DNA of 64,000 nt, from positions 1 to 64,000 of IMG/VR virus record IMGVR_UViG_3300020442_000005; one strand, written 5' to 3'. The position numbers and the translations under genes are program-made. Of this stretch, positions 9,008 to 49,800 are shown piece after piece. How positions within the stretch are numbered: the stretch's first letter is position 1; every line of letters starts with the position of its first letter. Under the pieces are notes generated by a model, which made no database searches, had not been told where the DNA came from, and saw only the letters and a program-made list of their open reading frames with translations.

Positions 9008-9366
9008 GGGGCCGTAATGGCTTCGACGGGGTAGAATCAAGAGGAGTGTGCATGCAGGTAAGATACGACCTTAACAGTTCAAAACAAATAGTTGCAAACA
9101 ATAACGACAACTTCGAAGTAGCTTTAGCTGCATAATCGACGCCGGTGTCTCTTCCGGTGTGAAACAAGAGGCTTAGCCAGTTAGTCGAGGCAAACATATC
9201 AAGACTACAATGGTTATCCTGGTAACAGGTGGAATCTCCAGCCAGAGGGAGATTGGTGGAAAATTATTTGGCTAGTTTGTTAATTAACAACATAATTAAC
9301 TATGCATGTGAATGACACAAATTAAGACTGCTGCGGACGCGGGTTCGACTCCCGCCGGCTCCACCA
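9008..9366 (+). ncRNA. ssrA: tmRNA, tag reading frame ANNNDNFEVALAA* at 9094-9135
   Basis: 5' GGGGCCG pairs with 3' CGGCTCC-ACCA with a G3:U pair; T-arm GCGGGTTCGACTCCCGC; AAATAGTT before resume codon GCA; ALAA C-terminus. Confidence 0.96.
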
Positions 9367-30196: not shown

Positions 30197-31357
30197 ATGA
30201 AAAAAAGTCAAGAATTAGACAAAAAACTGTTAAAAATTCTTCAAAATGAATCAAACAGACAGCACGAAATGCATAACTTTATAGCATCAGAGAATTTTTC
30301 ATCTGATCAAGTTCGCCGCTTCGTTGGTTCGAAGTTTACGAACAAGTATGCTGAAGGGTATCCTGGAAGACGGTATTATAACGGCTGCGAAAACTATGAT
30401 GAGCTAGAAAAGTATGCAAATGGATTGCTTAAAAATTTATACGGATGCAAATTTGCAAATGTACAGCCTCACTCCGGGGCCAATGCAAACTTGGCAATAT
30501 ACAAAGCGTTTTTGAAACCGGGCGACAGAACGCTTGGAATGGACTTAACCGCTGGTGGACATTTATCCCATGGATCTGGAGCAAATTTATCTGGCCAGTG
30601 GTTTGATGCACACTTCTATAACGTTGGAAACCTAGGTTGGCTAGACTATGATATCATAAGAAAAACAGCGAAAGAAGTTCAGCCAAGATTAATTGTTGCC
30701 GGCGCATCAGCATATCCCCGACAGATCGATTGGCTAGCTTTTCGACACATTGCTGATGAAGTCGGCGCATACCTTTTGGTTGATATGGCACACTACAGTG
30801 GTCTCATAGCCGGCAACGTTTATCCTAATCCAGTGCCGTATGCTGATTTTGTAACATCGACAACACATAAGACTCTACGTGGGGCACGTGGTGGAATGAT
30901 ACTGTGGAATAATCCAGACTATCGAAGAAAAATAAACTCAGCTGTTTTTCCTGGCACTCAGGGCGGTCCTCTTATGAATCAAATAGCTGGGAAAGCGCAA
31001 GCATTTTTTGAGGCATCCCAACCGGCATTTAAAGAATATGCTCAGACGGTCATCGATAACGCCAAAGTCATGGTACATACTTTTCATTCGAATGGAATTC
31101 AAATGTCGACAAACGGTACGGACTCTCACATAATCCTAATCCATACGGGAGATAAAACCGGAAAGGATGTTGCCAATGAACTTGAGCAAAAGCATGGTAT
31201 AGTGTGTAACAAAAACACTGTTCCAAATGATCCAAGGTCGGTTATAGAGACGTCTGGCATTCGAATTGGAACTGCCGCAATGACAACTCGAAAGGGTGCT
31301 GACTACGATTATTTCAAAAACATTGCAACAATAATCTCAAAAGTCATAAAGGAGTAA
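30197..31357 (+). CDS. glyA: Serine hydroxymethyltransferase
   Basis: IASEN, YAEGYPGRRYY, QPHSG, GGHLSHG, DMAH, TTHKTLRG, FPGTQGGP. Confidence 0.97.
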   Translation: MKKSQELDKKLLKILQNESNRQHEMHNFIASENFSSDQVRRFVGSKFTNKYAEGYPGRRYYNGCENYDELEKYANGLLKNLYGCKFANVQPHSGANANLAIYKAFLKPGDRTLGMDLTAGGHLSHGSGANLSGQWFDAHFYNVGNLGWLDYDIIRKTAKEVQPRLIVAGASAYPRQIDWLAFRHIADEVGAYLLVDMAHYSGLIAGNVYPNPVPYADFVTSTTHKTLRGARGGMILWNNPDYRRKINSAVFPGTQGGPLMNQIAGKAQAFFEASQPAFKEYAQTVIDNAKVMVHTFHSNGIQMSTNGTDSHIILIHTGDKTGKDVANELEQKHGIVCNKNTVPNDPRSVIETSGIRIGTAAMTTRKGADYDYFKNIATIISKVIKE

Positions 31358-33053: not shown

Positions 33054-33830
33054 ATGAGATTGAATGAAAGAAGATTAAGAAGGGTTATTAGAGGCCTAGT
33101 TTTAGAATTTGTGTCACAAATCCCACAGCCGCCGCCGGCATTAGAAAAGCTGCCTGGATATGCAAAAAATAAAGAGATGAATATCTTCAATGATTTGCAT
33201 GACCTTGCTAACAGCGCATTGCGAGACGAAGTTTTCAAACCAATTGATGATTCATATAGAAAGGGCCTCGATCAACCAAACGCAGATATCCAAGAGCCGG
33301 ACCACCTAAGAGATCCAGCTAGAAACGACTACTCGGAGTTTCTAGTTTGGGACATTGATGATGATCCACATCCAGACGTAATCCGCGGAATGAAACCAAA
33401 GGCTGGATACATGAAGTTATCTTTAAGCGCAACGGATCTAAGTCGAGAAGCAGGTTTATACTCTAAGGCTGATACGGTCGCGCGACTCAAGGACGGCCGG
33501 CATTTTGCAGAAATGAGTGGTCCCGCAGCTGGTGTTGCAATGACCGCTGGTGTAAAAGCTATTTTAGATCCAGAAAAAGTTCAAGAGTTACTCGGAAGTA
33601 GAAAAAAGATTCAATGGTTTGGAGTACATCCACACGATCAAGGTCATCCGGATTTTCAGGATAAAAACTCACGCCTCGAGGCAGAAGGCGCAAGAAGAAA
33701 ATCATCGGCAGATTACAAACCAGAAGATGAGACGGTACGGACGCCTGGCATGTATGATGGATGGTATGTACGAATGCTCGGCATGCCACCAAAGCCACAT
33801 GCTAAAATGATTTTCGGTGAAATAAACTAA
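33054..33830 (+). CDS. Hypothetical protein with leader variant MRLNERRLRRVIRGLVLE
   Basis: ORF track; leader-like N-terminus. Confidence 0.78.
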   Translation: MRLNERRLRRVIRGLVLEFVSQIPQPPPALEKLPGYAKNKEMNIFNDLHDLANSALRDEVFKPIDDSYRKGLDQPNADIQEPDHLRDPARNDYSEFLVWDIDDDPHPDVIRGMKPKAGYMKLSLSATDLSREAGLYSKADTVARLKDGRHFAEMSGPAAGVAMTAGVKAILDPEKVQELLGSRKKIQWFGVHPHDQGHPDFQDKNSRLEAEGARRKSSADYKPEDETVRTPGMYDGWYVRMLGMPPKPHAKMIFGEIN

Positions 33831-33834
33831 TAAT

Positions 33835-34236
33835 ATGGCCGGTGCAGGTTTTATCATATACTCTACCAGAGACAAAACAATAAAGTTTCTTGGATTAGTT
33901 GGGCCGCGTGAAATGCAGGTTAATCATGACGGAATATTCGACATTCCTAAAGGCACAATAGACCCGGGTGAAGATACCCTTGCTGCAGCCTTGAGGGAAT
34001 TAAAAGAGGAAACAGGCATAATACTTCCAAAAAAGAATTACCCTTATACTAGCTACGAAGGTCTGACAATCTATTTGGCACACAGCGAGAAACAGGCAAG
34101 AATACAGCCTAACCCAGAAACTGGCATTGTAGAGCATCAGATGGCTTTATATGTAGCGCCAGACCTATTAGAAAACCAAGCCTATGATTATCTGAGGCCG
34201 GCTATCGCGTGGGCAAGAGATTACTTATCAAATTAA
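33835..34236 (+). CDS. NUDIX hydrolase
   Basis: PKGTIDPGEDTLAAALRELKEETG Nudix box. Confidence 0.92.
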   Translation: MAGAGFIIYSTRDKTIKFLGLVGPREMQVNHDGIFDIPKGTIDPGEDTLAAALRELKEETGIILPKKNYPYTSYEGLTIYLAHSEKQARIQPNPETGIVEHQMALYVAPDLLENQAYDYLRPAIAWARDYLSN

Positions 34237-34293
34237 TTTTATATATTTACCCATTGCGATATATAATTATGAGTATATATTAATGGAGTAAAA

Positions 34294-35454
34294 ATGTCAA
34301 GTGTATTTTCGCATCACAAAACAGTTGCAGATCGATCTGCGTCTGATAGGCGGCGTCATAAGAAAAAAATAGAAGAAGCCATTAAGGATGGTATACACGA
34401 CATTGTCGCAGAAGAGTCTATTATAGGACAGGATGGGAAGAAAAAAATAAAAATTCCTGTTCGCGGTATTAAGGAATATAAGTTTGTATATGGTTCGAAC
34501 AATTCCGGAACAGGTGCCGGTGGCGAACATGACGTCAAAAAAGGCCAAGTTTTAAAGAAAGGACAGAAAAAACAGCAGCAAGGCCAAGGTGACAAACCTG
34601 GAAATCAGCCCGGGCAGGAATATTATGACGTTGAAGTCACACTAGAGGAATTGGCAGATTACCTGTTTGCTGATCTAGAGTTGCCAGAGCTAGAGAAAAA
34701 ATCATTAAAACAAATCGTTGCTGAAAAGTGGAAGCGTAAAGGATACAGACCGCAGGGCATAAGACCTAGACTTTCGAAAAAAGAAACAGCAAAGCAGCGC
34801 ATACGAAGAAAGAAAGCGGCAGAGCGCGCGTCTAGCATAGACCCAGATGAGCCGTTTTCATTTATCGAATCTGATCTGAGATACAAGCACATTACAAAAA
34901 CCGAGAAGAATATCTCAAACGCTGTAATATTTTTTATTATGGATGTATCCGGATCCATGTCAAAGGACAAGAAATATTTGGCAAGGAGTTTCTTCTTCTT
35001 GCTATATCATTTTATAAGATCGAAGTATGAAAAAACGGATCTAGTCTTTATAGCACATGATACTAGACCCTATGAGGTAGATGAGGACAAGTTTTTCAAC
35101 AGAGGTACTGGCGGTGGTACTATGGTATCTCCTACCTTGGAATATGTTTTAGAGGCAATCAATAAAAGATATGATCCATCAGCATGGAACATATATGCTT
35201 TCCATTGTTCAGACGGAGATAATTGGTCGTCCGATAACGACAAAACCTTAGAGCTGACGCTAAAAATAGCAGACATATGTCAATTGTACGGCTATTGCGA
35301 AATTGATCCGATGGAAACGGTTGCTTGGCTCAAATCCGACAACTCTCTAGGAGCGCTCTATGACAAAATACATTCAGTCAAATCAGCATTCATCAATTCA
35401 AAAAAAGACGTCTGGCCGGCCTTCAAAGAGTTTTTTGGAAAAACATCCAGTTAA
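34294..35454 (+). CDS. yeaH: YeaH/YhbH (DUF444) vWA protein
   Basis: DRRRH..KI, MDVSGSM, FIAHDT, GGGT.VS, YAFHCSDGDNW. Confidence 0.93.
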   Translation: MSSVFSHHKTVADRSASDRRRHKKKIEEAIKDGIHDIVAEESIIGQDGKKKIKIPVRGIKEYKFVYGSNNSGTGAGGEHDVKKGQVLKKGQKKQQQGQGDKPGNQPGQEYYDVEVTLEELADYLFADLELPELEKKSLKQIVAEKWKRKGYRPQGIRPRLSKKETAKQRIRRKKAAERASSIDPDEPFSFIESDLRYKHITKTEKNISNAVIFFIMDVSGSMSKDKKYLARSFFFLLYHFIRSKYEKTDLVFIAHDTRPYEVDEDKFFNRGTGGGTMVSPTLEYVLEAINKRYDPSAWNIYAFHCSDGDNWSSDNDKTLELTLKIADICQLYGYCEIDPMETVAWLKSDNSLGALYDKIHSVKSAFINSKKDVWPAFKEFFGKTSS

Positions 35455-35704
35455 AGAATCGACATTAGTAAGATTTGGATGGTATTACAGAAACAAACCC
35501 ATTCCGGATGATGAGACAAAAATAATTGGAGTGGTTTTAGATTCTCCAGAATGGAGATATTTTAGATACGAGAAGTTAAGTTTTTCAAAAGGAAAATGGT
35601 GTATTATTGAAAAAGAAGAGAACACATTAGTTGTTTGCGTTTATACACTGCATGGTGAGTTTGTATACTATCCATTATATAATTTGATAAAGGTTGAGGA
35701 ATGA
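35360..35704 (+). CDS. Small hypothetical protein inserted between yeaH and spoVR (true start uncertain)
   Basis: Fills the 35455-35708 gap; aromatic-rich. Confidence 0.55.
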   Translation: MTKYIQSNQHSSIQKKTSGRPSKSFLEKHPVKESTLVRFGWYYRNKPIPDDETKIIGVVLDSPEWRYFRYEKLSFSKGKWCIIEKEENTLVVCVYTLHGEFVYYPLYNLIKVEE

Positions 35705-35708
35705 AAAA

Positions 35709-36992
35709 ATGAGCGATTGGAATCTACGTGATCTTGAAAAATGGGATGAAGAGATTTGTAAAATAGCAAAGGACCATGGTTTAGATTGGTATCCAATAAC
35801 GTATGAAACATGCGATTATTATGAAATGATTGGCAACATGTCATACCACGGCATGCCGACACATTATGGCCACTGGTCATTTGGTAAATCTTTTGAGATA
35901 CAACATTCACAGTACCAGCATGGTGTGACTGGATTGCCTTATGAGTTGATTATAAATTCTGATCCTTGCATTTCTTACTTAATGCGTGAGAATCCACTAT
36001 ATTTACAGATATTGATTATGGCTCACTGCGTTGGCCACAGTGATTTTTTCAAAAAAAATCGAATGTTTGGATTTACCCGAGCTGATACAGTTGTACCGAG
36101 AATGAGAAACGCAAAAAAGAGAATTCAAAAATATGTCGAAGATCCATGGATCGGTATTGAAAAAGTCGAAAAAGTGATAGATGCCTGCCAAGCTCTTTCA
36201 TATCAGGTACCTAGGCACCCCAAAGACGTTGTTTCTCTTAAGGAAGAGTACGAAGCTGATAAAATAGTAAACAAAAAAGCAGAACTAGAAAAGCCACCAT
36301 ACAAAGAGTATGATATATTAGGGTTCGTGCTAGATTTTGCAACAGACTTGCCAGAGTGGAAAAGGGATATCATATCAATTGTTCGTGATGAAGCTTATTA
36401 TTTTATGCCGCAAATAAGAACAAAAGTTATGAATGAAGGTTGGGCATGTTTCTGGCATTACAAAATCGTACATGAACTGAATTTACCGCAAAAGTATCAC
36501 ATTCCTTTTTTAAAATCTCATAATCAAGTTGTAAGACCACACGTTGGAAGAATCAACCCTTATCATTTGGGCTTTCATTTGTTTAACAAAATAGAAGAAA
36601 GACACGGCCTGAAGGAATGTTTTATTGCCCGTGAAGTCCATAATGATGAGTCTTTTATAAGACAATATCTGACACAAGAAGATTGCGAAGAACTTAATCT
36701 ATTTTCATATTCTAAAAACGATATTAATGATTTAGTTGTCGACGAAGTATCAGACTATGATGGTTGGAAAACGGTTAAAAACAATTTAATAAACCAGATT
36801 GGTTCGAACTCAATTCCGGTAATTTATGTAGAATCGATCGAAAAAGACAATACACTAATACTACACCATGAACACGACGGACGTGACCTACAGATTCAGT
36901 ATGCTGAACATGTTTTAGAACATTGTAAACATCTGTGGCAATCTGATGTAAGATTAATAACAATGCTTGACGAAGCACCATACGAAATTTAA
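35709..36992 (+). CDS. spoVR: SpoVR/YcgB family protein
   Basis: GMP.HY.HWSFGK, LPYELIINSDP, AH..GHSDFF, TKVMNEGWA, NPY.LG. Confidence 0.95.
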   Translation: MSDWNLRDLEKWDEEICKIAKDHGLDWYPITYETCDYYEMIGNMSYHGMPTHYGHWSFGKSFEIQHSQYQHGVTGLPYELIINSDPCISYLMRENPLYLQILIMAHCVGHSDFFKKNRMFGFTRADTVVPRMRNAKKRIQKYVEDPWIGIEKVEKVIDACQALSYQVPRHPKDVVSLKEEYEADKIVNKKAELEKPPYKEYDILGFVLDFATDLPEWKRDIISIVRDEAYYFMPQIRTKVMNEGWACFWHYKIVHELNLPQKYHIPFLKSHNQVVRPHVGRINPYHLGFHLFNKIEERHGLKECFIAREVHNDESFIRQYLTQEDCEELNLFSYSKNDINDLVVDEVSDYDGWKTVKNNLINQIGSNSIPVIYVESIEKDNTLILHHEHDGRDLQIQYAEHVLEHCKHLWQSDVRLITMLDEAPYEI

Positions 36993-37003
36993 GGGAGCAA
37001 ATA

Positions 37004-38929
37004 ATGTCGTCTAATTTTTTAGATATTATTAAAAAACAAAGAAAAAAATCAAAGGACAAGAAGTTCGAGGGAACGTTTCTGGAATATCTAGAGCTAGTTC
37101 GTGAAAACCCAGACATCGCAAAGCATGCGCATAAAAGATTGTATGATGCTATAAGAAGCCAGGGAGTACGAGAAATTTCAGATGAAGATCCACGTAAACG
37201 AAAAATTTTCGATAACGAGGCTGTTAGAGTATATGAATACTTCGACAAAGAATTCTTTGGAATGGAATCGGTCATTGAAAAGATTATGCGTTTTCTTAAA
37301 GGAGCTTCCTTACGCGGTGAAGAGTCACGACAAGTGCTTTTGCTGATGGGACCGGTTGGAGCGGGTAAGTCTGCTTTGACAGAACATATCAAGTCAGCGC
37401 TGGATGGTTTATCTTACTACCATCTAAAAAATGATCCGCAGCGAGGAGAACCACTACAATTGTTGCCAAGGTCTCTTCGAAAGCAGTTTGAAGATCTGTT
37501 GAGTGTAAAGATCGATGGAGACATATCTCCTGTTGCAAGATGGAATCTCCTAAATGAATATAGTGGCAAATACGAGAACTTCGATGTAGTCCAGTCGACT
37601 TTTTCTCAAAGAGGGCGCCGCGGCATTGCCTCTGTTCCACCTATGGATGCAAATTCTCAAGACGTCTCTGTGTTAATTGGAAGTGAAGACATATCTAAAC
37701 TTGATAAGTTCTCTGAGGACGATCCTCGTGTGCTTAATCTAACCGGTGCCTTTAACGTTGGGAATCGGGGACTAGTTGAACTGATTGAGGTATTCAAGAA
37801 TGAGATCGAGTTTTTACACACTATTATTACGGCAACGCAGGAAAAACGCGTTCCTGCTCCGGGTAAGCATGATATGGTCTTCTTTGATGGTGTTATCCTG
37901 GCTCACTGTAATGAAAGCGAATGGAATCGATTTAAGTCAGAGCATACCAACGAGGCAATCCTGGATCGTGTTGTTAAGATCAACGTCCCATACGTGTTAG
38001 AGCTTGACCAAGAAGTAAAAATTTACGAAAAAATACTTTCAAAGTCAGACTTCAAAGCGCATATAGCTCCGCATACTATCAAAGTGGCTGCAATGTTTTC
38101 CGTCATGTCGCGACTTAAGTCAACCGGAAAATGTGACTTGCTAACAAAGATGAAAATCTACAACGGCGAAGACGTGATTGAAAAGGGTAGAGTAAAGAAA
38201 ATTGATATAATGGATCTGAAAGAGGAAGTCCGAGACGAAGGGATGACCGGCATCTCTACAAGATTTATATCAAAGGCAATTGACCACGCGTTAACTGATC
38301 ATTCTAAGCAATGTGTTACTCCTATCGGCGTGATGAAATCGCTCACTAAAATGGTAAAAGAGCAGATAGTTGATAATGACTTCCGTGAGCACTGCCTTGA
38401 AATCATTCAGAAGATTGTCAGAGAAGAATATCTTCGCATCCTAGAAACAGAGATTGCAAAGGCATTTATCACTGCGTATGAGGAACAAGCTCAGTCACTT
38501 TTTGACACTTATCTTGACAATGCAGAAGCCTATACGACTAAGAGAAAAATAAGAGATGATGTTACGGGCGAAGAAAGAAACGTCGATGAAAAGTTTATGA
38601 AATCAATTGAAGAAGTAATCGGCATCACTGGATCTTCTCGTCAAGGATTTAGATCTGATGTGACAGCTTACATGTTTGCAAAAATCAGGCACGGCGAAAA
38701 AGTCGATTATACTTCATATGAGCCGTTGAAAGAAGCAATCGAAGCATACCTTATAAACTCGGTAAAAGATATGGCTAGAATTGTTACTAAATCAAAATCA
38801 CGTGATGACGACCAAAAGAAAAAGTATAGCGATATGGTAGAAACACTTATTGAAGAATACGGATACAACGAACATAGTGCCGAAGAGATTCTACGTTATG
38901 CATCTAATAATCTTTGGAGAGATTCCTAA
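37004..38929 (+). CDS. prkA: PrkA/YeaG AAA+ ATPase (serine kinase family)
   Basis: FFGME.VIEKI, GPVGAGKS, G.FNVGNRG, EAILDR, GISTRF. Confidence 0.95.
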   Translation: MSSNFLDIIKKQRKKSKDKKFEGTFLEYLELVRENPDIAKHAHKRLYDAIRSQGVREISDEDPRKRKIFDNEAVRVYEYFDKEFFGMESVIEKIMRFLKGASLRGEESRQVLLLMGPVGAGKSALTEHIKSALDGLSYYHLKNDPQRGEPLQLLPRSLRKQFEDLLSVKIDGDISPVARWNLLNEYSGKYENFDVVQSTFSQRGRRGIASVPPMDANSQDVSVLIGSEDISKLDKFSEDDPRVLNLTGAFNVGNRGLVELIEVFKNEIEFLHTIITATQEKRVPAPGKHDMVFFDGVILAHCNESEWNRFKSEHTNEAILDRVVKINVPYVLELDQEVKIYEKILSKSDFKAHIAPHTIKVAAMFSVMSRLKSTGKCDLLTKMKIYNGEDVIEKGRVKKIDIMDLKEEVRDEGMTGISTRFISKAIDHALTDHSKQCVTPIGVMKSLTKMVKEQIVDNDFREHCLEIIQKIVREEYLRILETEIAKAFITAYEEQAQSLFDTYLDNAEAYTTKRKIRDDVTGEERNVDEKFMKSIEEVIGITGSSRQGFRSDVTAYMFAKIRHGEKVDYTSYEPLKEAIEAYLINSVKDMARIVTKSKSRDDDQKKKYSDMVETLIEEYGYNEHSAEEILRYASNNLWRDS

Positions 38930-39111
38930 TGACTAAAATTACGATAGGCATGCCTGAGTTTTTACTTGCATATAGTTTTTGTATGTACAACGTCTCATGG
39001 GGATTGTCCGTTTTAACGCTTACAATTGCGGTAATCAGCAGATTAGCAAGCACACTGGTGGATTATGGTGACAAAAAACAAGATGGTTTGGTCAGCGACC
39101 AAATCAAATGA
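38929..39111 (+). CDS. Small membrane protein
   Basis: TAATG coupling; hydrophobic core. Confidence 0.55.
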   Translation: MTKITIGMPEFLLAYSFCMYNVSWGLSVLTLTIAVISRLASTLVDYGDKKQDGLVSDQIK

Positions 39112-40297
39112 TTTCGAAAACATAGTTCATGATATAAAAAAGCTTTCCACTTCTGGAATATACTCATCACAAAACGTGTTTTTCAAGAACGATGTTTTTA
39201 ATTACATACGTTCCCTAGAGTCCGATTCAAGTCTGGACTATGCAAAAAGAAACATCATTCTTGATACACTGCTTTGCGCAAGAAAATACTCACCCGGAAC
39301 AGAAGTATTGTTGGCTGATATGATTGTATCAGCCGACTCTTATAACAACGAAAGAGTGTGTCGAATAAGTTCCGGCGAAGCTGCCAGTCTTACAAAGTCA
39401 AAGATTCAAAATCGGGAAGCCCAGCGTATATTTCAATCGATAGTTGATTTAATGGGTACTACTGGGCGTATTCATATCACTGAAGAACCCATCGCGTCAA
39501 CAGAGATTAAGCTCAGTGAAGGATGCGAAATAAACATTACGATAGACCATAGATTTGCGGCTCAGTCAAATGTAAAAAATATAAAATTTGATTTTGTTAA
39601 AGTATGCATTATTGAAGGCGCACCAGCTTCAGTTTCTGAAATAAATAAACTTCTTACTCACTGTCATGAAAACAACACGGTGCTTCTTCTGTTAGCAAGA
39701 TCTTTTCCAGAAGAAGTAATCAACACCTTATCAGTTAATTGGAACAGCAAAAAACTGAGGGTTATGCCCTACGTATATGGTGACAGCGTTTACAATATTA
39801 ATTCACACGCAGATCTCGCTGCGGTGTCCGGTGCCATTCCTGTATCGCAAATGTTTGGTGATTCACTGTCTTCAGATTTAACAGAAAAATTTGGTTCACT
39901 GTTGCAGTTTGTTAACCACGGAAAAAAAGTAACAGCCAGACCGACCTGTGATCCAAAAAGATTAATCAATGACTTAAAAACAAAATTGAGTAAGGTCGAC
40001 TGGTCAAATCATGACAGTGTTGAAATTATAACCAGAAGAATATCGGCATTATCAGACAAAACTTTGTATGTGAAAATTGCAAAATCACAAGAATCCTGGC
40101 GAATAAAAAATGAAGTAGATATTGCAATTGCTCAGTACAACAGCTATTGTAGGAAGACAATTGTCGTAAAAAGAAACGGAAAATTAGAAAAATTACCTTA
40201 TGACATTTACAAAAAAGCAACCGAACTGCAGAATACTTTTAGAACGCTGACAGAAAAAATAGGTGGCTTTATTGTTTACTGTGATAAAAAACATTGA
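39065..40297 (+). CDS. Divergent, shortened GroEL-like chaperonin
   Basis: IVDLMGTTGRIHITE..EIKLSEG ~ GroEL AMDKVGKEGVITVED..ELDVVEG; apical LLLLARSFPEEVINTLSVN; DLAAVSGA. Confidence 0.75.
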   Translation: MVTKNKMVWSATKSNDFENIVHDIKKLSTSGIYSSQNVFFKNDVFNYIRSLESDSSLDYAKRNIILDTLLCARKYSPGTEVLLADMIVSADSYNNERVCRISSGEAASLTKSKIQNREAQRIFQSIVDLMGTTGRIHITEEPIASTEIKLSEGCEINITIDHRFAAQSNVKNIKFDFVKVCIIEGAPASVSEINKLLTHCHENNTVLLLLARSFPEEVINTLSVNWNSKKLRVMPYVYGDSVYNINSHADLAAVSGAIPVSQMFGDSLSSDLTEKFGSLLQFVNHGKKVTARPTCDPKRLINDLKTKLSKVDWSNHDSVEIITRRISALSDKTLYVKIAKSQESWRIKNEVDIAIAQYNSYCRKTIVVKRNGKLEKLPYDIYKKATELQNTFRTLTEKIGGFIVYCDKKH

Positions 40298-41467: not shown

Positions 41468-41519
41468 GACTAAGTTTTTAGTCTTTGCAAATAAATGGAG
41501 ATCTTTGATCTCCATTTTT
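41466..41519. terminator. Tandem hairpins / bidirectional terminator between convergent genes
   Basis: AAGACTAA-GTTT-TTAGTCTT and AAATGGAGATC-TTT-GATCTCCATTT. Confidence 0.85.
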
Positions 41520-41859: not shown

Positions 41860-43218
41860 ATGAGTAGAAAAATATTCGTTGTTGATACATCAGTTATGCT
41901 TTATGATAAGCTAGCAATTCATCAGTTTAATGGTAACGACATTGTACTACCACTTTGCATTCTGGAAGAACTCGATAAGTTCAAAGAAAAAAGTGGACTC
42001 CTTGGAGAATCCGCGCGATATGTAAATAGATACTTAGATGCACTCAGAGACTCTGAAAAAGATTCTGCGGCATGGAGCATCTCCCCAGAAAACGACATTA
42101 GATATAAATTTGTTACAAAATCATTAAAGTCTTTTATTCCGGAAGGTCTAGACACAAGCTACACAGACAATCAAATAATCGCATGCGCAAAATACTTAAA
42201 AGAAATGCATCCAAACAAGGTCGTCTTAGTTATCACTAAAGACATAAATCTTCGTGTAAAATGTGATGCTGTGGGTGTCGTTGCTGAAGATTATTTTAAA
42301 GACCACATTGAATCCGACGTAAAATCGTTGCGTGGCTATAGAGAGATAGAGGTAGATTCGACTGTTATCGATGAGTTTTACTCAGAGGGAAGTGTGAAGA
42401 TTGACTGTGAAGCCGATCAAAAAATAGAGGAAAATTGTTTTGTGATTGCAAAATCCAACTCTGGATCAGGTCAATCTTTTTTGGGAATCAACAAAGGTTC
42501 TAGTATTAAAAAACTAAACTATGAAATGAACGGCTTTATAAGTGTAGAGCCAAGAAATTCAGAGCAACGTTTTGCAATAGAGGCCTTACTTGATCCAAGC
42601 ATTTCACTTGTAACATTAACTGGCTTGGCAGGTTCCGGAAAGACTTTTTTGGCACTTATGGCTGGATTATACAAGTTACAAAACAGCAATCGCGGCGTAG
42701 GTGGTATCAAAATACCAGAAGAATTTGCTAACTTTTCAGACAATTATGACAGATTAGTAATTACTCGGACGTTGCAGCCTGTTGGTCGTGATTTAGGATA
42801 TTTACCTGGTAGCATGGAAGACAAAATGCAGCCATGGCTAATGCCCATACTAGATAACGTACGTCATGCATTTAAGGATATATCATATTTTAAAATGATG
42901 ATAGACAATGGCGAAATTGAAGTTGCTCCTATTCCATATATCAGAGGTCGTACTTTCACAAATTCTCTAGTATTGGTTGACGAAGCACAAAACGCAACAA
43001 TACATGAGCTCAAAACTATTATTACGCGTATAGGATCGGGATCAAAAATAGTATTACTAGGGGACATCGATCAAATCGATACGCCATATATTGACAGACA
43101 GTCTTCGGGTTTGAGCATAGTTATAGACAAGTTTCGTAATTCAAAATTGGCTGCTCACGTCAATCTGTCAAAAGGTCAAAGATCTGATTTGGCATCTGCC
43201 GCGGGTATGATTCTGTAA
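41860..43218 (+). CDS. phoH: PIN-PhoH ATPase (PhoH2/YlaK-like)
   Basis: VVDTSV, TKDINLRVK, GLAGSGKT, IRGRTF, DEAQN, GDIDQID. Confidence 0.93.
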   Translation: MSRKIFVVDTSVMLYDKLAIHQFNGNDIVLPLCILEELDKFKEKSGLLGESARYVNRYLDALRDSEKDSAAWSISPENDIRYKFVTKSLKSFIPEGLDTSYTDNQIIACAKYLKEMHPNKVVLVITKDINLRVKCDAVGVVAEDYFKDHIESDVKSLRGYREIEVDSTVIDEFYSEGSVKIDCEADQKIEENCFVIAKSNSGSGQSFLGINKGSSIKKLNYEMNGFISVEPRNSEQRFAIEALLDPSISLVTLTGLAGSGKTFLALMAGLYKLQNSNRGVGGIKIPEEFANFSDNYDRLVITRTLQPVGRDLGYLPGSMEDKMQPWLMPILDNVRHAFKDISYFKMMIDNGEIEVAPIPYIRGRTFTNSLVLVDEAQNATIHELKTIITRIGSGSKIVLLGDIDQIDTPYIDRQSSGLSIVIDKFRNSKLAAHVNLSKGQRSDLASAAGMIL

Positions 43219-43875: not shown

Positions 43876-46800
43876 ATGTCAAAAGATTTTAGAATCAAAC
43901 AATTGCGTACGACTCAGGTCATAGTATCGGGATCCGCTGTAGGAACTACCCCGAGTTTGCTAATTTATTCAGCATCGGCTGCAACCAATCTAGATGGAGG
44001 CGTTCATGCAGATTTGCTGACGTCAGTAGGAAAAGATGTCTGGATGTTTGTATCTGGTGCAAAAAACGACTCAGATCAGGCCCAAACGCTACACAGTGAC
44101 AAGATTTTATTCGGCGGTGACGTTGTTATATCGGGTACTCTATACGCTGAAAAACAAGTTTTAGAAGTTGATTATTCTCAAAAATCCGATCTTTTTCTAT
44201 CTGGCGCAATCGTATTCGGAGACCAAGGTGCCGCCGGCCAAGATGCTGGACAGGCAAGATTGCTAGAGTCGGTTGGTAACAATTCAGGTTCGTTGTTTAT
44301 ATCGACTGGATCTTTATATTTAGGCCTTAAATCATCCGGAAATTACGCAGAAACAGAGTTAACTCCTAAGGTTTATGTGGCCGCTAACGGTTTGGGAGAG
44401 CAAGTCGCGACTGCGACAAATACGTCTTTTAATCTAGATATTAACAATCTCACCGGATCTCTTACGCAGGCAACTATAGCTTCTGGTGATTTATTCGCAG
44501 TAGCAGATATTAATGCCGTAAATAACGAATCTAAAAAAATTACACTTGCAAACGTTGCACTTAAGCTTGCCGGCACCGGTTTAGAAGCGACGGATGGAGT
44601 GGTCGCAGTAGACCTGAACGATTCTGGCGCTGGAACGATCAATCTAACAAATGATAGTATTGTATTTATTGATGCAGATGATTCGAACGCAACGAAAAAA
44701 CAGACAATAAGTGCGGTTGCGACAGCCCAGGCCGGAGACGGAATACAGGCCACAAACGGTGTTTTTGCTGTTGACGTTTCTGATTTTGCTGGTGACGGAT
44801 TGTCCGATGACGGTTCAGAAAATTTAAAAGTCGATCTCAACTCGCTAGCCACATCCGCAGCAATTAACCAAGCAGATTCAATTGCGTTCATTGACTCAGA
44901 CAATGTAACTAAAAAGGGCACAATCGATTCTCTTGTAACGGCAATTGCAGGATCTGGATTATCAAACACATCAAGTCAGCTAGCTTTAACAAGTAACGAA
45001 GTGACTGTCACGGCTGGTGACGGACTAAAAGGAGGAGGTGGCGTCAGCCTCGGAGGTTCCGTAACAATAAACGTTGAACCCAATGATTTTGCTGGTACTG
45101 GCCTAGAAGATGACGGATCGGACAATTTGCGAATAGCCGCTTCAGCAGCGGGTGACGGTCTAAGCGGTGGAGGTGGATCTGCTCTTGCTGTCTCTACGGG
45201 AACTGGCCTTAAAATCGTTGGTGATAACGTCGCGACCGACGATAGTGTAGTTGCACATCTGACTGGATCAGTTTTTACAGGTGTTGTTCAGTTTGACAAT
45301 ACCGTAAATGTCGCAGCTGATATTGCACATGCTGGTGGCGATACAGACACAAAAATTACATTTAATACCGATAGAGTGACTGTAACTGCAGGAAATGTAA
45401 ATGCGATTGACGTTATTGAGGACGGTTCGAATTCAGAAGTGGTTATCAACGAAACTGGTGATGCTACAATGGATTTTAGGGTCGAAACAGACAATCTGCA
45501 AAAGGCAATCTACACTAATGCCGAAATGGATTATGTGACCATAGGGGATGACGTCGGCGTAAAACAGGACATGCATCTGTTTGTTTCGGGTACCATCGGA
45601 GGTGTCGGTACCGAAGGTGTCGCTGTATTCGGAGGCGACGTTGTAGTAAGCGGTTCATTACTTGATGGTAGTCATAATCCAATAAAATTGTTGTCCTACA
45701 ATGAAAACGGTACATTCACAACTCCTCCAAATGCCACCGGGACAAATGCCGTTGCGATAGGTAATAACGCTGTTGCTAGTGGAAACAACTCTATAGCAAT
45801 GGGTACAAGCACGACAAACCAAACAGACGCTACAGGGATTCACTCACTAGCGATTGGAGGTGACGATGCAACAGCTTCCGGCCAGTATGCTTCCGCGATT
45901 GGTGGTTATCAAAATACATCCAGTGGAAATTATTCCGTCACTATGGGTCGCGGGAACACAGCTTCGGAATCTGATGCAATTGCAATTGGTAAGTCACTAA
46001 CCGTTAATACCGCTGACACTATAGCTATTGGAAACAGTTCAGACAATGCATCCATACAACTAAAGGGCAACGTTGCTGTCGAGGGAACATCAACTTTGGA
46101 AGGAGACGTAACCCTTGGTAATACTGCTGATTTAATTATTCCTACGTTTATAAAACACAAATCAGATCTTAATACTTATATTCAGTATAACACTGACCGT
46201 ATAAGACTGGTTACTAATGGTGCAACAGATGTCGACATTACGACAAATCAGATTTTACTCACCCCTGGAGCTGACGGTACACCAACAGAATCAGCAGGTT
46301 TGGACGTCGCATTTTATGTCTCTGGTTCTGTCGCCACTCAAGGTACCACAGTCCGGGCAACATCACTCTTCGGTGGCGATGTGCACGTCTCTGGTTCTTT
46401 ATCTGGGCCTGACTCCTTTACTTTTGGAAACGATAACACAAGGATATTTAGAGACGGCAATAATCTAAAATTTGATGATGGCAACAACACAGTAAAAACA
46501 TTATCAGAACTAGCAACCGTTCCGGGCGAAGGTGCATTTATAAATGGCGTACACGGTGGTTCAAATAACTCTAAAGCCGCAACCTCAGCATCGTTTGCGA
46601 TTGCTGGAACTCAGGGTGCTAGCTTCTATACTGAAAACATCGGATCTGATGTTTTGTTATATGTTTCTGGTGGTTTAAGATCTGATACTGCTGCATACGG
46701 AAAGACCGCGGCCGTGTTTGGCGGAGCAGTTGTGTTCTCAGGTTCAGCAACATATCTTGGTGAAACTAGTTTTAACGTTATAGAAGCAACGACTGCAATA

Positions 46801-49800
46801 AAAACACCGTCGATACAAGATGCATCTGGAAACGAATCGATTAGAATTAATTCACAAAAAGTTGCGGTGGGTAATGCTATCAATGCAAATCCAAGTGCTA
46901 TATTTGAAGCTCCCCTAGCTGATAATACTCAGGCTGCAGCAACAAACGAAATTAGTAACTTTAACATCTTCCTAAACAACAGATCAGTACAAACAAATGC
47001 CTTTGCCGGAATAGGTTTCGATGTGTCGACAGAAGTCGACGCTGATTCTATTGGCGCTGCAATTAGAGCCGAAAGAGACACGTCGGCTAGTACCACGGCC
47101 GCAAATCACGCTACAAACTTGACATTTGCTACAAACCCAAATACCGGGGATGATGCTCTTACTGAAAGAATGCGTATTACTCATGATGGAAAGGTTGGTA
47201 TCGGTGTTGATCCAGGTTACGCTCTAGATGTTTTTGGTGACGTACGTATCCGTGGTAATGATTTAAGAGATAATAGTGGTGCAGTGTTTATCAGTGCAGA
47301 CGGCAGCGCAAACACAACCGTTTCGTTGGATCTTACTGTCGCCGGCGGTAATATTTTTGGACCACCCACCGGTGACTTAAACATTAAATCCGACGGAAAT
47401 CTTACTTTTGTCCTAGATAACGATAACAATGAAACGTCCCAAAGACTATTGGTTCAAAACACATCAAGCGACATATTTGAAGTAACTGAAGCGGGAGATG
47501 TTGTTGTTGGTAACGACTTATTCGTTTATGGCAACGATATAAAGGATTCCGGGGATCACACTGTGATCACATTCAACGGCCTAGGAGAGACGTCAATAGG
47601 TAACCTCACCATCACCGGTTCGAACTTGGTTGTTGGTCCAGATGCTGATGGCGCCGATCGATCTATTGTGTTTGGTCATTCTACACTAAAATCAATCATG
47701 GGTATTGACGACGATCAAGATGTGTTTGCCATTAATACTGATGCAACGTTCGAATCTGTAAATGATTTTGAGATAGACGCATCAGGTAACGTTACAATAG
47801 GTAATGGCGATCTTCAAATCGGCGGCGATGATATTAAGGATTCAGGTGGAAATATAGCAATATCCTTCGACGGATCTGGTGCCATAGACAACAACGCTTC
47901 TTTCAGCGGAATTGTTGAGTTTACACGTTCAGGGCCAGGTTCCAATCCTGCCTCTATTAAGTTGGCAAAAGGTATAGGTAGTACAGACGAAGCAACCACT
48001 TTAATAGCTGTAAATGGCGACTCTGGAAGAAATATTGAACTACTTCCCGCAGGCATTAACTTCTTGAAGTGTAAAAACCCATCTTCTAGTCAGAAAGAAA
48101 TTGTTATCAACGATGACAGCAGCGACATTGACTTCAGGGTTGAATCTAACGCCGAAACACACATGTTTTTTGTTGATGGCGGCACGGATAGAGTAGGTAT
48201 TGGTATAGACGGTCCAACGACTACGCTTGAGATTAAGGGAGCAAACGCTGACGAGACTGCAGTTCAGATTAAAGATTCTCAAAGCTCAGATACAATTATA
48301 AAACTACATCACGAAAACGGTGAAGACGACGGTGTACTCGATCTATACGTTAACGGGACTGCAAACACAAGATTGCATGGAAACGGTACATTGAGTGTTG
48401 CTTCTGGAAATCTAACGCTAGAAACTACTGGAACTGATTCTGATATTATTTTCAAAGTCGATGATAATACTACTGAGTTTACGGCGTTAACAATCGATGG
48501 ATCAGACCTCGGAAGTTTATTACATACTCCGTTGGATGGCGGCTCTTTGCAGGTAAACGACACCGGTACTGACGGTTTCTCCGAGGTTAATGGAAACGGT
48601 GGATTGAATCTATATAGATATTCAGACAGTGCTTCTTCGACAGCGACTGTTAATTTTTATAAGGCTCGTGGCAATGAATCATCACAATCAGCATTAAGCA
48701 CAGATGACACAATTGGATCGCTTACCTTCTTTGGTTACGATACCGCTGCATCTGCAGCTGCGCGTATACAAGTGAAAGCCGCGGATGCTCATGGATCTCT
48801 CGGTGATACAACAGACTCCCCAGGAAAGATATTATTCCAAACAGTTCCAAATGGTAGTAGCACACTAACAGACGCTCTATTAATTGGTTCTGACCAGTCA
48901 TCAACTATTTACGGTGATATATTTTTGCCACAGACAAGTACTATCGACACTACCGGTAACCTAACTATCGAAGCATCCGGAGACATCAAGTTTACGCATG
49001 ACGGTACTCAATTCATGCAGATTGAAGATTTCACCGGTGACGTTGCGATTGGATCACACGATCCGACCGTTAGGCTTGACGTTGAAGATACTACAACAGG
49101 CTACGTAGTTGAGTTTAATAACGGAAGTACATCTTCCGGATGCGATATGTTGCTGATGAAATTTACCGGTGTAGTGAATCCTGGAGGTACTATAATAAGA
49201 GCTATCGGCTCAGCCTCTGGCCAGGTATACGCAGTCAACGGCGACGGCGACGGTACCAGTACAGTGTCTACGACGTTTACCGGATTCCATGATACTGCAA
49301 CACTTTCCTCTGATGATCTAATACCTGGAATGATTGTTGAGTCGACTGGAATTCCTTGGGTTAAGGATCCGACAAATAACTACCATAATATGCTGCCATA
49401 TACTAGAATATGCGCATCAAACGGATCATCAACTGTTTTTGGTGTAACTGCAAAGGACAATGCGCTCGATATATATGACGAGAATGATGATAAAATACCT
49501 AATCCAAATTTGGGCGGACTAAGACCAGGATGCTTCCCAGCGCTTTCGACAAACAATCCAATGGCATCTAATCATGAACATCTGTCTGTTATGTCACTGG
49601 GCGAAGGTGCAATCTGGGTAACAAACATAGCTGGAAATATAACAAATGGGGATTTGATTGAATCGTCTGAGATCGCTGGTTACGGAAGATTGCAGCCTGA
49701 TGACATTATGAGATCTAAAACAGTTGCAAAGTGTACAGAAGCAATTGACTGGGATTCGGTCTCCGCAGTTATCGAACATAATGGCCAAACTTACAAAAAG

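What the first reader, a model, noticed from the sequence alone, without database searches (positions are those of the whole stretch)
34294..38929. Complete YeaH-SpoVR-PrkA (YeaG/YeaH/YcgB) module in a phage
Seen: all three members, full length, in the order yeaH, small inserted ORF, spoVR, prkA. Established: the trio is conserved in bacteria and archaea and linked to nitrogen starvation/stationary phase (E. coli) and sporulation (B. subtilis), with a poorly defined mechanism. Inference: the phage manipulates host dormancy or development, or uses its own AAA+/vWA remodelling or proteolysis machine.
Basis: partly seen in the sequence, partly recalled or inferred. Interest (0 to 1): 0.72.

Follow-up and report, generated by a model that had tools for sequence, protein, structure and literature searches.

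The report
PrkA-YeaH-SpoVR operon in marine jumbo phage
A 273-kb marine phage, like at least 175 related uncultured viral contigs, carries an intact and strongly conserved copy of the bacterial PrkA/YeaH/SpoVR starvation module, which most likely lets the phage drive ATP-dependent breakdown or remodelling of host proteins during infection.

Summary
Window 34294-38929 encodes full-length YeaH/YhbH (DUF444, intact vWA MIDAS), a small extra ORF, SpoVR and PrkA (AAA+ with Walker A, plus the PrkA C-domain). The genes are co-oriented, tightly packed and have good ribosome-binding sites. The contig is a phage: a 273-kb T4-like jumbo myovirus with terminase, portal, major head and sheath genes.

The trio is not a recent passenger. 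All related viral loci fetched that hold upstream DNA have the same order, yeaH-spoVR-prkA. All true cellular loci retrieved (L103-L177) that hold the neighbours have prkA-yeaH-spoVR. The phage copies form one clade in all three gene trees. PrkA is more conserved than terminase or capsid, and dN is 0.02-0.07 at saturated dS.

Phage-borne trios were already in GenBank (Thermus phiYS40, Ralstonia RsoM2USA, megaphages) and in PHROGs, but I found no discussion of them as a module.

Best mechanism, inferred: a phage-made AAA+ motor with a vWA adaptor and SpoVR, which here shows a zincin (thermolysin-like) fold, drives host-protein turnover, as E. coli YeaG/SpdA does in starvation.

Sporulation control is unlikely. 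This is a new member of a known kind and moderately interesting.

The parts
33835..34236 (+). NUDIX hydrolase gene, the upstream neighbour; syntenic with the module in many clade members
   Evidence: PF00293 E 1.4e-11. tblastn finds it just upstream of yeaH in many related loci at 31-45% identity.
34238..34267 (+). Promoter-like site (TTTATA-18-TATAAT) in the 57-nt AT-rich gap before yeaH; a weak candidate only
   Evidence: 10/12 match. The number of promoter-like sites in the region is not above the shuffled expectation, so this is only a lead. Sequence.
34294..35454 (+). yeaH/yhbH: DUF444 protein with a C-terminal vWA domain and an intact MIDAS motif (D217-x-S219-x-S221, T276, D307)
   Evidence: Pfam DUF444 3e-112 and TIGR02877 2.7e-122. 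GGAG lies 5 nt before the ATG. The MIDAS residues are conserved in at least 97% of 147 phage and cellular homologues.
35360..35704 (+). Small lineage-specific ORF between yeaH and spoVR. It is 114 aa from ATG 35360 (AGGAG 6 nt upstream) or 89 aa from TTG 35435, overlaps the yeaH 3' end, and has no known family.
   Evidence: The frame is open and conserved in close kin L095-L097, with a 33%-identical ORF in L015/L098. dN/dS is about 0.2. No Pfam, NCBIfam or PHROG hit. The Atlas holds it from residue 26. It is absent from most clade members and was not called by gene callers in close kin.
35694..36992 (+). spoVR/ycgB homologue (probable start ATG 35709). The N-terminal ~330 aa has a zincin-like fold with H111-x3-H115 and N247-E248 motifs; a small C-terminal alpha/beta domain follows.
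37004..38929 (+). prkA/yeaG homologue: AAA+ domain (Walker A G116-PVGAGK122-S123; conserved E259/E262; F236 at the position aligning with the published pore-loop Tyr) plus the PrkA C-terminal domain
   Evidence: PF08298 4e-136 and PF06798 4e-79. PDB 9xip 'serine protein kinase' E 7e-90. 173 positions are conserved in at least 97% of 159 homologues, all kept here. GGGAG lies 6 nt before the ATG.
38929..39111 (+). Small hydrophobic ORF (~60 aa) translationally coupled to prkA (TAATG overlap)
   Evidence: Sequence. An equivalent 49-59-aa gene is called at the same place in close relatives. 42% identity in L015. Function unknown.
39065..40297 (+). Shortened, fast-evolving GroEL-like (Cpn60 family) protein; downstream neighbour in many clade members
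   Evidence: phrog_5725 'chaperonin groEL' 1.3e-8. PDB GroEL 5da8 E 2.9e-4. Atlas structure TM 0.78 to a viral GroEL family. Syntenic at 20-32% identity.
41493..41517 (+). Terminator-like hairpin (11-bp stem, T tail), a possible end of the transcription unit
   Evidence: Terminator-like sites: 16 found against 8.8 +/- 2.9 expected. Inference only.

Best explanation
Shown: the locus is a complete, intact yeaH-(small ORF)-spoVR-prkA operon in a ~273-kb marine T4-like jumbo myovirus. It is an ancient, vertically inherited core gene set of a large clade of uncultured marine jumbo phages, and it has a phage-specific permuted gene order.

Inferred: it works as the cellular module is now thought to work, as a three-part ATP-driven protein-remodelling or proteolysis machine.
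- PrkA is the AAA+ (Lon/FtsH-like) motor.
- YeaH is a vWA/MIDAS adaptor, as in MoxR-vWA pairs.
- SpoVR is a zincin-fold (thermolysin-like) partner that keeps an HxxxH...E metal-site signature and may supply or regulate peptidase activity.

Because the phage makes these proteins itself, the machine would run in the infected cell without the host's starvation sigma-factor control. It would turn over bulk host cytoplasmic protein, as E. coli YeaG/SpdA does in carbon starvation, releasing amino acids and energy for producing a very large virion in nutrient-poor seawater.
For: - Identity and integrity. These show the Walker A Lys, the MIDAS residues and all family-invariant residues.
- Phage context.
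- Core status: the order yeaH-spoVR-prkA is found in every related viral locus that holds upstream DNA (175 stretches matched, 80 loci examined), including two complete DTR genomes of 293 and 298 kb.
- PrkA identity exceeds that of TerL and MCP in the same genome pairs: 87 vs 81/72, 76 vs 64/65, 71 vs 58/63 and 71 vs 59/64 %.
- Selection: against 95-97% aa-identical relatives, dN is 0.024-0.07 while synonymous sites are saturated (pS 0.76-0.82), so omega is far below 0.1.
- Single origin: the phage clade is monophyletic in the PrkA (98), YeaH (90) and SpoVR (97) trees. All true cellular loci retrieved that hold the neighbours have the order prkA-yeaH-spoVR, at 54-57% PrkA identity.
- Mechanism, from literature: E. 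coli YeaG is required for starvation-induced, largely non-specific cytoplasmic proteolysis (PMC13684143). B. subtilis PrkA is reported as an ATP-dependent, Walker-A-dependent protease (PMC9512850). B. anthracis PrkA is an AAA+ clade-III protein with a pore loop (PMC13001217). The three genes are tightly cofit in six bacteria (bioRxiv 072470).
- Proteostasis context: GroEL-like neighbour, full GroEL, ClpP-like gene and tmRNA in the same genome.
- Relatives' module sequences occur in seawater metatranscriptome assemblies.
Against: - No experiment bears on the phage proteins.
- Pure B. anthracis PrkA had no protease or kinase activity, and the earlier protease report may reflect a contaminant (PMC13001217).
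- SpoVR lacks the catalytic Glu of HExxH in every homologue: Cys in 78/78 phage copies, Val or Ala in cells. It may therefore be a pseudo-peptidase.
- Complex prediction for PrkA and YeaH gave no verdict.
- The host is unknown.
- Metatranscriptome contigs do not prove transcription.
- The bulk-proteolysis phenotype is shown only for E. coli YeaG, which is about 30% identical and belongs to a different subfamily.
Confidence: 0.45

Rival explanations
1. Signalling kinase. Phage PrkA acts as a Ser/Thr protein kinase, with YeaH and SpoVR as accessory signalling parts, and phosphorylates host proteins to reprogram metabolism, dormancy or development.
For: The family's historical annotation is serine protein kinase. 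The C-terminal PF06798 domain has distant kinase similarity (PMC9512850). YeaG was reported to phosphorylate itself or casein, and the trio was proposed as a signalling pathway (bioRxiv 072470). Phage-encoded kinases are common.
Against: Kinase activity was not reproducible for B. subtilis or B. anthracis PrkA, and the kinase P-loop is degenerate. The only nucleotide site shown to matter is the AAA+ Walker A. Sporulation is not relevant to the likely hosts: the phage is found in marine metagenomes and its nearest cultured relatives infect Flavobacterium and cyanobacteria.
Confidence: 0.15
2. Phage-directed chaperone or maturase. The AAA+/vWA pair works like MoxR-vWA systems, on the phage's own proteins. 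It would assemble, mature or insert a cofactor into a large phage complex (virion or replication machinery), together with the neighbouring GroEL-like protein.
For: The AAA+ plus vWA/MIDAS architecture. A conserved GroEL-like neighbour, and a full GroEL elsewhere in the genome. Core-gene conservation exceeds that of TerL and MCP, as expected for something essential to the phage itself.
Against: The operon lies among nucleotide-metabolism and host-takeover-type genes (helicase, SHMT, NUDIX, PhoH), about 80 kb from the structural block. The same trio in cells has no phage substrate and yields starvation and proteolysis phenotypes. Other phages of similar size lack it, for example the Flavobacterium phage immuto.
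Confidence: 0.2
3. Targeted counter-defence or takeover. The machine degrades or inactivates specific host proteins, such as defence systems, sigma factors or regulators, rather than bulk proteome.
For: AAA+ proteases often act on specific regulators. B. subtilis PrkA affects sigma-K/ScoC indirectly. The position among early or middle-type genes fits takeover. The small lineage-specific ORF and the fast-evolving GroEL-like neighbour could be adaptors.
Against: Extreme sequence conservation of all three proteins is unlike arms-race genes. PADLOC was not searched and no anti-defence similarity was tested. The E. coli data indicate largely non-specific turnover.
Confidence: 0.1
4. Artefact or passenger. 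The contig is cellular or chimeric, or the trio is a recent, non-functional capture of host DNA.
For: IMG/VR classes the record as 'linear' with 82% estimated completeness. Some relatives are filed in bacterial MAGs. Enterobacter phage LAU1 carries YeaG-YeaH at its very end, which looks like captured host DNA.
Against: Phage hallmark genes lie on the same contig. The MAG contigs have phage gene order and phage neighbours, and two of the MAGs also carry the clade's capsid gene. The nearest cellular homologues are only 54-57% identical and have a different gene order. The module is conserved across the clade under strong purifying selection.
Confidence: 0.02

Closest known systems
Cellular PrkA-YhbH-SpoVR operon of the PrkA type (Bacillota/Clostridia, Thermodesulfobacteriota, Binatia; B. 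subtilis PrkA/YhbH/SpoVR)
   Same: Same three families, all full length, with the same invariant residues (Walker A, MIDAS, SpoVR HxxxH/NEGWA). This is the nearest sequence relative: PrkA 54-57%, YeaH 41-48%, SpoVR 40-47% identity. The SpoVR model superposes on B. subtilis SpoVR at TM 0.86.
   Different: The gene order is permuted: yeaH-spoVR-prkA in phages against prkA-yeaH-spoVR in the cellular loci. The phage copies form a separate, long-stemmed clade. SpoVR position 112 is Cys in 78/78 phage copies and Val in 63/63 cellular ones. The module is encoded by a virus, next to NUDIX and a GroEL-like gene, and this genome has an extra small ORF.
E. coli YeaG (SpdA)/YeaH/YcgB
   Same: Same families and the same predicted SpoVR fold (TM 0.86 to YcgB). 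This is the best functional reference: YeaG-dependent starvation-induced bulk proteolysis (PMC13684143) and cofitness of the three genes (bioRxiv 072470).
   Different: It belongs to a different subfamily: very distant in the PrkA tree, and the window's PrkA scores 404 bits against a cut-off of 576 for the YeaG equivalog model. E. coli splits the genes into yeaGH and ycgB, and they are under RpoS control. The phage operon carries its own signals.
Trios already present in sequenced phages: Thermus phages phiYS40, TMA, Lalka and MN1; Ralstonia jumbo phage RsoM2USA; four 595-642-kb metagenomic megaphages (PHROGs 19072, 35217, 22605)
   Same: Phage genomes carrying all three families. phiYS40 even has the order yeaH-spoVR-X-prkA.
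   Different: They are only 21-37% identical to the window's proteins. RsoM2USA groups with E. coli YeaG, and phiYS40 sits on a very long branch, so there were probably at least three independent acquisitions. None belongs to the marine clade, and none of the papers found discusses the trio as a module.
ATP-dependent metalloprotease FtsH (AAA+ plus M41 zincin) and MoxR-vWA pairs (RavA-ViaA, CbbQ-CbbO, Mg-chelatase BchI/BchD)
   Same: The working analogy is an AAA+ motor with an aromatic residue at the predicted pore-loop position, combined with a zincin-fold partner (as in FtsH) and with a vWA/MIDAS adaptor (as in MoxR systems). The knowledge of these systems is established; the parallel is my inference.
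   Different: The parts are separate polypeptides. SpoVR lacks the HExxH glutamate. PrkA has an extra C-terminal kinase-like domain. No membership is claimed, and no significant sequence similarity was found beyond the Lon/RuvB-like P-loop region.

Membership tests
PrkA/YeaG family (AAA_PrkA + PrkA C-domain) | N-terminal PF08298 AAA_PrkA domain and C-terminal PF06798 domain, both full length | tested here: met
   E 4e-136 (profile 2-357/358) and 4e-79 (1-255/255). Solved homologue 9xip E 7e-90 over residues 14-635.
PrkA/YeaG family (AAA_PrkA + PrkA C-domain) | Walker A GxxGxGK[ST] with the lysine needed for ATP binding (B. subtilis K108) | tested here: met
   G116-P-V-G-A-G-K122-S123; these positions are conserved in at least 97% of 159 homologues. 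K108 function from PMC9512850.
PrkA/YeaG family (AAA_PrkA + PrkA C-domain) | Score above NCBIfam's equivalog cut-off for YeaG (PRK15455) | tested here: not met
   404 bits against a cut-off of 576. The protein is of the PrkA (Bacillota-like) type, not the enterobacterial YeaG type.
PrkA/YeaG family (AAA_PrkA + PrkA C-domain) | ATPase, protease or kinase activity | not testable with these tools
   Needs biochemistry. The literature on cellular homologues disagrees.
YeaH/YhbH (DUF444, vWA) | Full-length DUF444 with the vWA MIDAS motif (DxSxS ... T ... D) | tested here: met
   PF04285 3e-112. D217, S219, S221, T276 and D307 are conserved in at least 97% of 147 homologues.
YeaH/YhbH (DUF444, vWA) | Score above the TIGR02877 'sporulation protein YhbH' equivalog cut-off | tested here: not met
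   408.5 bits against a cut-off of 467.95, though aligned end to end. It is therefore not an orthologue of the sporulation protein by NCBI's rule.
SpoVR/YcgB | PF04293 plus the SpoVR_C domain, and the family fold | tested here: met
   1e-119 and 3e-10. Model pLDDT 88; TM 0.86 to P37875 and P29013.
Conserved prkA-yeaH-spoVR module | All three genes adjacent and co-oriented | tested here: met
   Gaps are 11 nt (spoVR to prkA) and about 250 nt (yeaH to spoVR), the latter filled by the small ORF.
Conserved prkA-yeaH-spoVR module | Canonical gene order prkA-yeaH-spoVR | tested here: not met
   The order is yeaH-spoVR-prkA here and in all related viral loci. The canonical order is found in all retrieved cellular loci that hold the neighbours.
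Zincin (gluzincin) metallopeptidases, considered for SpoVR | Thermolysin-like catalytic-domain fold | tested here: inconclusive
Zincin (gluzincin) metallopeptidases, considered for SpoVR | HExxH with catalytic Glu, plus a downstream Glu ligand | tested here: not met
   H111-C-V-G-H115 has the two His but never Glu at position 112: C in phages, V or A in cells. N247-E248 ('NEGWA', resembling what I recall of the M1 'NEGFA' motif) is invariant. Do not file SpoVR as an active zincin peptidase.
Zincin (gluzincin) metallopeptidases, considered for SpoVR | Significant sequence or profile similarity | tested here: inconclusive
   hhalign against the E. coli PepN catalytic domain gives E 0.063 and probability 0.9%, on the GAMEN region only. 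A profile search against PDB finds nothing.
Tailed phage (T4-like jumbo myovirus) | Terminase large subunit, portal, major head protein and tail sheath on the same contig | tested here: met
   Nearest cultured relatives: Flavobacterium phage immuto (TerL 42%), Microcystis phage Mel-JY01 and cyanophages.

The most novel reading that the evidence does not exclude
A widespread clade of marine jumbo phages carries its own 'starvation proteolysis' engine, in which SpoVR is the long-missing peptidase-like (zincin-fold) subunit of the PrkA/YeaG AAA+ machine. The phage would use it to convert the host proteome into amino acids and energy. This would be a viral, autophagy-like auxiliary metabolic module, and a compact, highly conserved set of proteins for working out the biochemistry of the whole family.
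Probability: 0.3. Interest if true: 0.85.

Novelty: new member of a known kind. Interest (0 to 1): 0.6.

Why it matters
The PrkA/YeaG-YeaH-SpoVR trio is one of the most widespread bacterial modules whose mechanism is still poorly understood. In 2026 YeaG was tied to global starvation-induced proteolysis in E. coli, but the biochemical roles of the three parts remain open.

A large clade of ocean jumbo phages keeps the whole trio and conserves it more tightly than capsid and terminase. This implies that the machine works autonomously in a foreign cell and gives the phage a strong benefit. It suggests a new class of viral auxiliary function, recycling of host protein, to set beside the known recycling of host DNA.

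The phage proteins also form a natural minimal set for reconstitution. The zincin-like fold of SpoVR yields a direct, testable hypothesis for where proteolytic or substrate-handling activity in the family resides.

Tried and rejected
- blastn of the locus against GenBank phages found no match. Only protein-level relatives exist there.
- A numeric dN/dS could not be computed for the three genes, because synonymous sites are saturated (pS 0.76-0.93) even against 95-97% aa-identical relatives. Only the bound omega far below 0.1 is claimed. A first script timed out.
- Complex prediction with PrkA 22-641 and YeaH 1-380, using my own alignments, scored 0.00 with no verdict. This is neither for nor against binding.
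- Foldseek against PDB found nothing at E <= 0.001, for both the whole SpoVR model and the domain model.
- PDB sequence searches for SpoVR and YeaH found nothing meaningful, with either a single sequence or a profile.
- hhalign of the SpoVR profile against the E. coli PepN catalytic domain gave E 0.063 and probability 0.9%. It is not significant.
- The promoter scan found no more sites than shuffled sequence, so the promoter before yeaH is only a candidate.
- I considered a frameshift or slippage fusion of YeaH to the small ORF at the A7 run and rejected it. The ORF is in the +1 frame, L015 has its own ATG overlapping the yeaH stop, and the A run simply encodes a conserved Lys-Lys.
- B. subtilis T217, the PrkC phosphosite, is Ile in the phage, so I considered escape from host kinase control. 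This was not pursued, because the nearest cellular homologues also have I or V there (pattern).
- RNA evidence is limited to metatranscriptome contigs of relatives at 80-90% nt identity, laid on yeaH, spoVR and prkA. DNA carry-over cannot be excluded.
- Host assignment was not achieved.


Full report
**1. The observation**

ORF listing gives four co-oriented ORFs at exactly the stated coordinates:
- 34294-35454 (386 aa)
- 35360-35704 (114 aa, another frame, overlapping the end of the first)
- 35694-36992 (432 aa)
- 37004-38929 (641 aa)

Pfam assigns them as follows:
- First ORF: DUF444 (E 3e-112).
- Third ORF: SpoVR (1e-119, profile 1-404 of 407) plus SpoVR_C.
- Fourth ORF: AAA_PrkA (4e-136, 2-357 of 358) plus the PrkA C-terminal domain (4e-79, 1-255 of 255).

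NCBIfam aligns YhbH end to end, so all three proteins are full length. Each gene has a Shine-Dalgarno sequence: GGAG 5 nt before yeaH and GGGAG 6 nt before prkA. Close relatives start spoVR at the ATG that corresponds to 35709.

**2. It is a phage**

- The window is the first 64 kb of a single 273,025-bp IMG/VR virus record with 39.9% G+C.
- 184 of 202 ORFs of at least 150 aa are on one strand.
- The first 165 bases recur at the other end with two mismatches, which suggests a closed assembly. IMG/VR nonetheless classes the record as linear, and CheckV estimates 82% completeness.
- Outside the window lie terminase large subunit (120937-122514), portal, major head protein (130393-132372) and tail sheath.
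- The nearest cultured relatives by TerL and capsid are Flavobacterium phage vB_FspM_immuto (42-44%), Microcystis phage Mel-JY01, Rhodothermus RM378 and T4-like cyanophages.
- Near-identical DNA is present in marine metagenomes of at least eight studies.

**3. The trio is a core gene set of a large phage clade**

- A protein search returned more than 7,500 PrkA homologues. The best 120 are 76-100% identical and come from marine (Tara and other) assemblies, with contigs of up to 215-306 kb.
- A scan of IMG/VR found 175 viral stretches. I examined 80 loci. Every locus with enough upstream DNA has yeaH, spoVR and prkA adjacent and in that order.
- Two of these records are complete genomes with direct terminal repeats (293 and 298 kb).
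- In the same genome pairs, PrkA is more conserved than terminase or major capsid protein:

| Genome | PrkA % | TerL % | MCP % |
|---|---|---|---|
| G001 | 87 | 81 | 72 |
| G002 | 76 | 64 | 65 |
| G004 | 71 | 58 | 63 |
| G005 | 71 | 59 | 64 |

- Against three relatives whose PrkA is 95-97% identical, dN is 0.024-0.043 (prkA), 0.050-0.054 (yeaH) and 0.055-0.070 (spoVR). Synonymous sites are saturated (pS 0.76-0.82).
- Omega is therefore far below 0.1, and these are the most constrained genes of the neighbourhood (phoH dN 0.16; GroEL-like gene 0.31). The second refuter, relaxed selection, also fails.

**4. Origin**

- A scan of one genome per prokaryote species gave two kinds of hits.
- Five 'MAG' contigs are 69-84% identical: Methylococcaceae TMED69 (a 305,838-bp contig), Legionellales, Halobacteriovorax, Bdellovibrionota and Luteolibacter. 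They have the phage gene order and phage neighbours (NUDIX, GroEL-like, PhoH). Two of these MAGs also hold the clade's capsid gene. These are mis-binned phage contigs.
- All true cellular loci (Bacillota/Clostridia, Thermodesulfobacteriota, Binatia and others) are only 54-57% identical in PrkA. Those that hold the neighbouring genes all have the order prkA-yeaH-spoVR.
- In maximum-likelihood trees the phage copies form one clade for PrkA (SH-aLRT 98), YeaH (90) and SpoVR (97). The clade sits among the PrkA-type cellular sequences, without a resolved sister group. It is very far from E. coli YeaG, with which the Ralstonia phage copy groups.
- The simplest reading is one ancient capture of the whole operon, one rearrangement, and then vertical inheritance.

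**5. What was already known**

- PHROGs has families for all three proteins.
- Among 50,697 GenBank phage records, PrkA occurs in 17 and SpoVR in 14. They are Thermus phages (phiYS40, TMA, Lalka, MN1, phiLo), Ralstonia jumbo phage RsoM2USA and four 595-642-kb megaphages. Enterobacter phage LAU1 carries YeaG-YeaH at its end.
- phiYS40 has yeaH-spoVR-X-prkA, and RsoM2USA has prkA-yeaH-spoVR.
- The RsoM2USA paper lists SpoVR and PrkA separately, under replication and signalling (PMC8504454).
- I found no paper that treats the trio as a phage module or reports the marine clade.
- The finding is thus a new, very large lineage of something already on record.

**6. How it probably works**

From the literature:
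- The three genes are mutually cofit in six bacteria (bioRxiv 072470).
- B. subtilis PrkA binds and hydrolyses ATP through Walker A K108. It was reported to degrade casein, and no kinase activity was found (PMC9512850).
- Highly purified B. anthracis PrkA is an AAA+ clade-III protein with a Tyr-Gly pore loop, but it has no protease activity on its own (PMC13001217).
- E. coli YeaG, renamed SpdA, is required for starvation-induced, largely non-specific degradation of cytoplasmic proteins that feeds stress-protein synthesis (PMC13684143).

Shown here:
- The phage PrkA keeps Walker A (K122), the conserved acidic residues E259/E262, an aromatic residue (F236) at the position that aligns with the published pore-loop Tyr, and all 173 near-invariant family positions.
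- YeaH keeps the MIDAS residues.

For SpoVR:
- I built a confident model (pLDDT 88, pTM 0.88) that superposes on B. subtilis SpoVR and E. coli YcgB at TM 0.86.
- The family-invariant H111-x3-H115 and N247-E248-G-W-A lie on two long helices. From my own knowledge, these correspond to the HExxH helix and the Glu helix ('NEGFA' in M1) of gluzincins.
- The catalytic Glu of HExxH is never present: Cys in 78 of 78 phage copies, Val in 63 of 63 PrkA-type cellular copies, and Ala in E. coli and RsoM2USA.
- Foldseek and profile comparisons are not significant.

I therefore state only that SpoVR has a zincin-like fold with a retained metal-site signature. It may be a non-canonical peptidase or a pseudo-peptidase that handles substrates.

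Putting this together, my inference is an AAA+ motor, a vWA adaptor and a zincin-fold partner, in effect a split FtsH/MoxR-like machine. Made by the phage, it would act without the host's RpoS-type control and turn host protein into building blocks and energy.

The genomic context fits a proteostasis theme:
- A small hydrophobic ORF is coupled to prkA by a TAATG overlap.
- A shortened GroEL-like gene follows directly.
- The genome also encodes a full GroEL, a ClpP-family protease and a tmRNA.

**7. Rivals**

- Kinase signalling, with dormancy or sporulation control, is weakened by the failure to reproduce kinase activity and by the marine setting.
- A chaperone or maturase for phage proteins remains plausible: the module is a core gene set and has a GroEL-like neighbour.
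- Targeted counter-defence is possible, but it fits poorly with extreme conservation.
- Artefact or passenger is excluded.

**8. The small ORF**

- The frame 35360-35704 is open and conserved in the three close relatives, and a 33%-identical ORF with its own ATG sits at the same place in L015 and L098.
- dN/dS is about 0.2.
- It has no family match.
- Most clade members lack it: yeaH and spoVR are about 0-45 nt apart there.
- It is an accessory insertion, not part of the conserved machine.

**9. Weak or negative results**

- Complex prediction gave no verdict.
- Promoter-like sites are not enriched. One site lies in the gap before yeaH, and a terminator-like hairpin lies at 41493-41517.
- Contigs of three seawater metatranscriptomes at 80-90% nucleotide identity lie on yeaH, spoVR and prkA. 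This is compatible with transcription of relatives' modules but does not prove it.

**10. Verdict**

- Novelty: a new member of a known kind. It is a large marine phage lineage of an already recorded, unstudied class of phage-borne PrkA modules.
- It has above-average interest because it links ocean jumbo phages to the newly described starvation-proteolysis programme, and because it suggests a role for SpoVR.

Noticed in passing
window 9008-9366 (+): The phage encodes a tmRNA with tag peptide ANNNDNFEVALAA. ARAGORN finds it and Rfam RF00023 scores 114.7 bits. A phage-borne tmRNA fits the proteostasis theme and might help host assignment.
   Followed up: partly
window 39065-40297 (+); also G000 205120-206709 and 169135-169617: A shortened, fast-evolving GroEL-like protein lies directly downstream of prkA and is syntenic in many relatives. 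The same genome also has a full-length Cpn60 (E 2e-59) and a ClpP-family protease (E 2e-28) outside the window.
   Followed up: partly
window 38929-39111 (+): A ~60-aa hydrophobic ORF starts with an ATG that overlaps the prkA stop codon (TAATG). It is conserved in position in relatives. It may be a membrane partner or be unrelated.
   Followed up: no
window 36027-36029 (SpoVR residue 112): The position equivalent to the catalytic Glu of HExxH is Cys in all 78 phage-clade SpoVRs, Val in all 63 PrkA-type cellular ones, and Ala in E. coli YcgB and RsoM2USA. This is a clade-diagnostic substitution next to the putative metal site.
   Followed up: partly
L098 (NHDW01000006.1, 305,838 bp), L099-L102: Contigs filed in GenBank MAGs of Methylococcaceae TMED69, Legionellales, Halobacteriovorax, Bdellovibrionota and Luteolibacter carry the phage-order module with phage neighbours. 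Two of the MAGs also hold the clade's capsid gene. These look like jumbo-phage contigs mis-binned into bacterial MAGs.
   Followed up: partly
run X3 laid on window 33800-39700: A very small run (2.5 Mb of contigs) is labelled with an organism name rather than 'metagenome'. It holds this phage at 95-100% identity across the locus. It may be a single-cell genome and so a host link, but the name is coded.
   Followed up: no
L069 / G003 (IMG/VR record of 361,490 bp, classed 'provirus'): This record carries the same yeaH-spoVR-prkA order, and its PrkA falls inside the phage clade. It has no close TerL or MCP homologue and no shared flanking genes, so the module may also sit in a second, different jumbo-virus lineage.
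   Followed up: partly
window 1-165 and G000 272861-273025: The contig ends overlap by 165 bp with two mismatches. The assembly is probably circularly closed, or shows population variation at the join, although IMG/VR labels it linear and 82% complete.
   Followed up: yes
window 41860-43218, 30197-31357, 43876-49833: Other cargo near the module: a PIN-PhoH fusion protein, a serine hydroxymethyltransferase, and a 1,985-aa ORF. In relatives the gene at the corresponding position has a weak YadA_head hit, so this ORF may be a fibre or adhesin.
   Followed up: no
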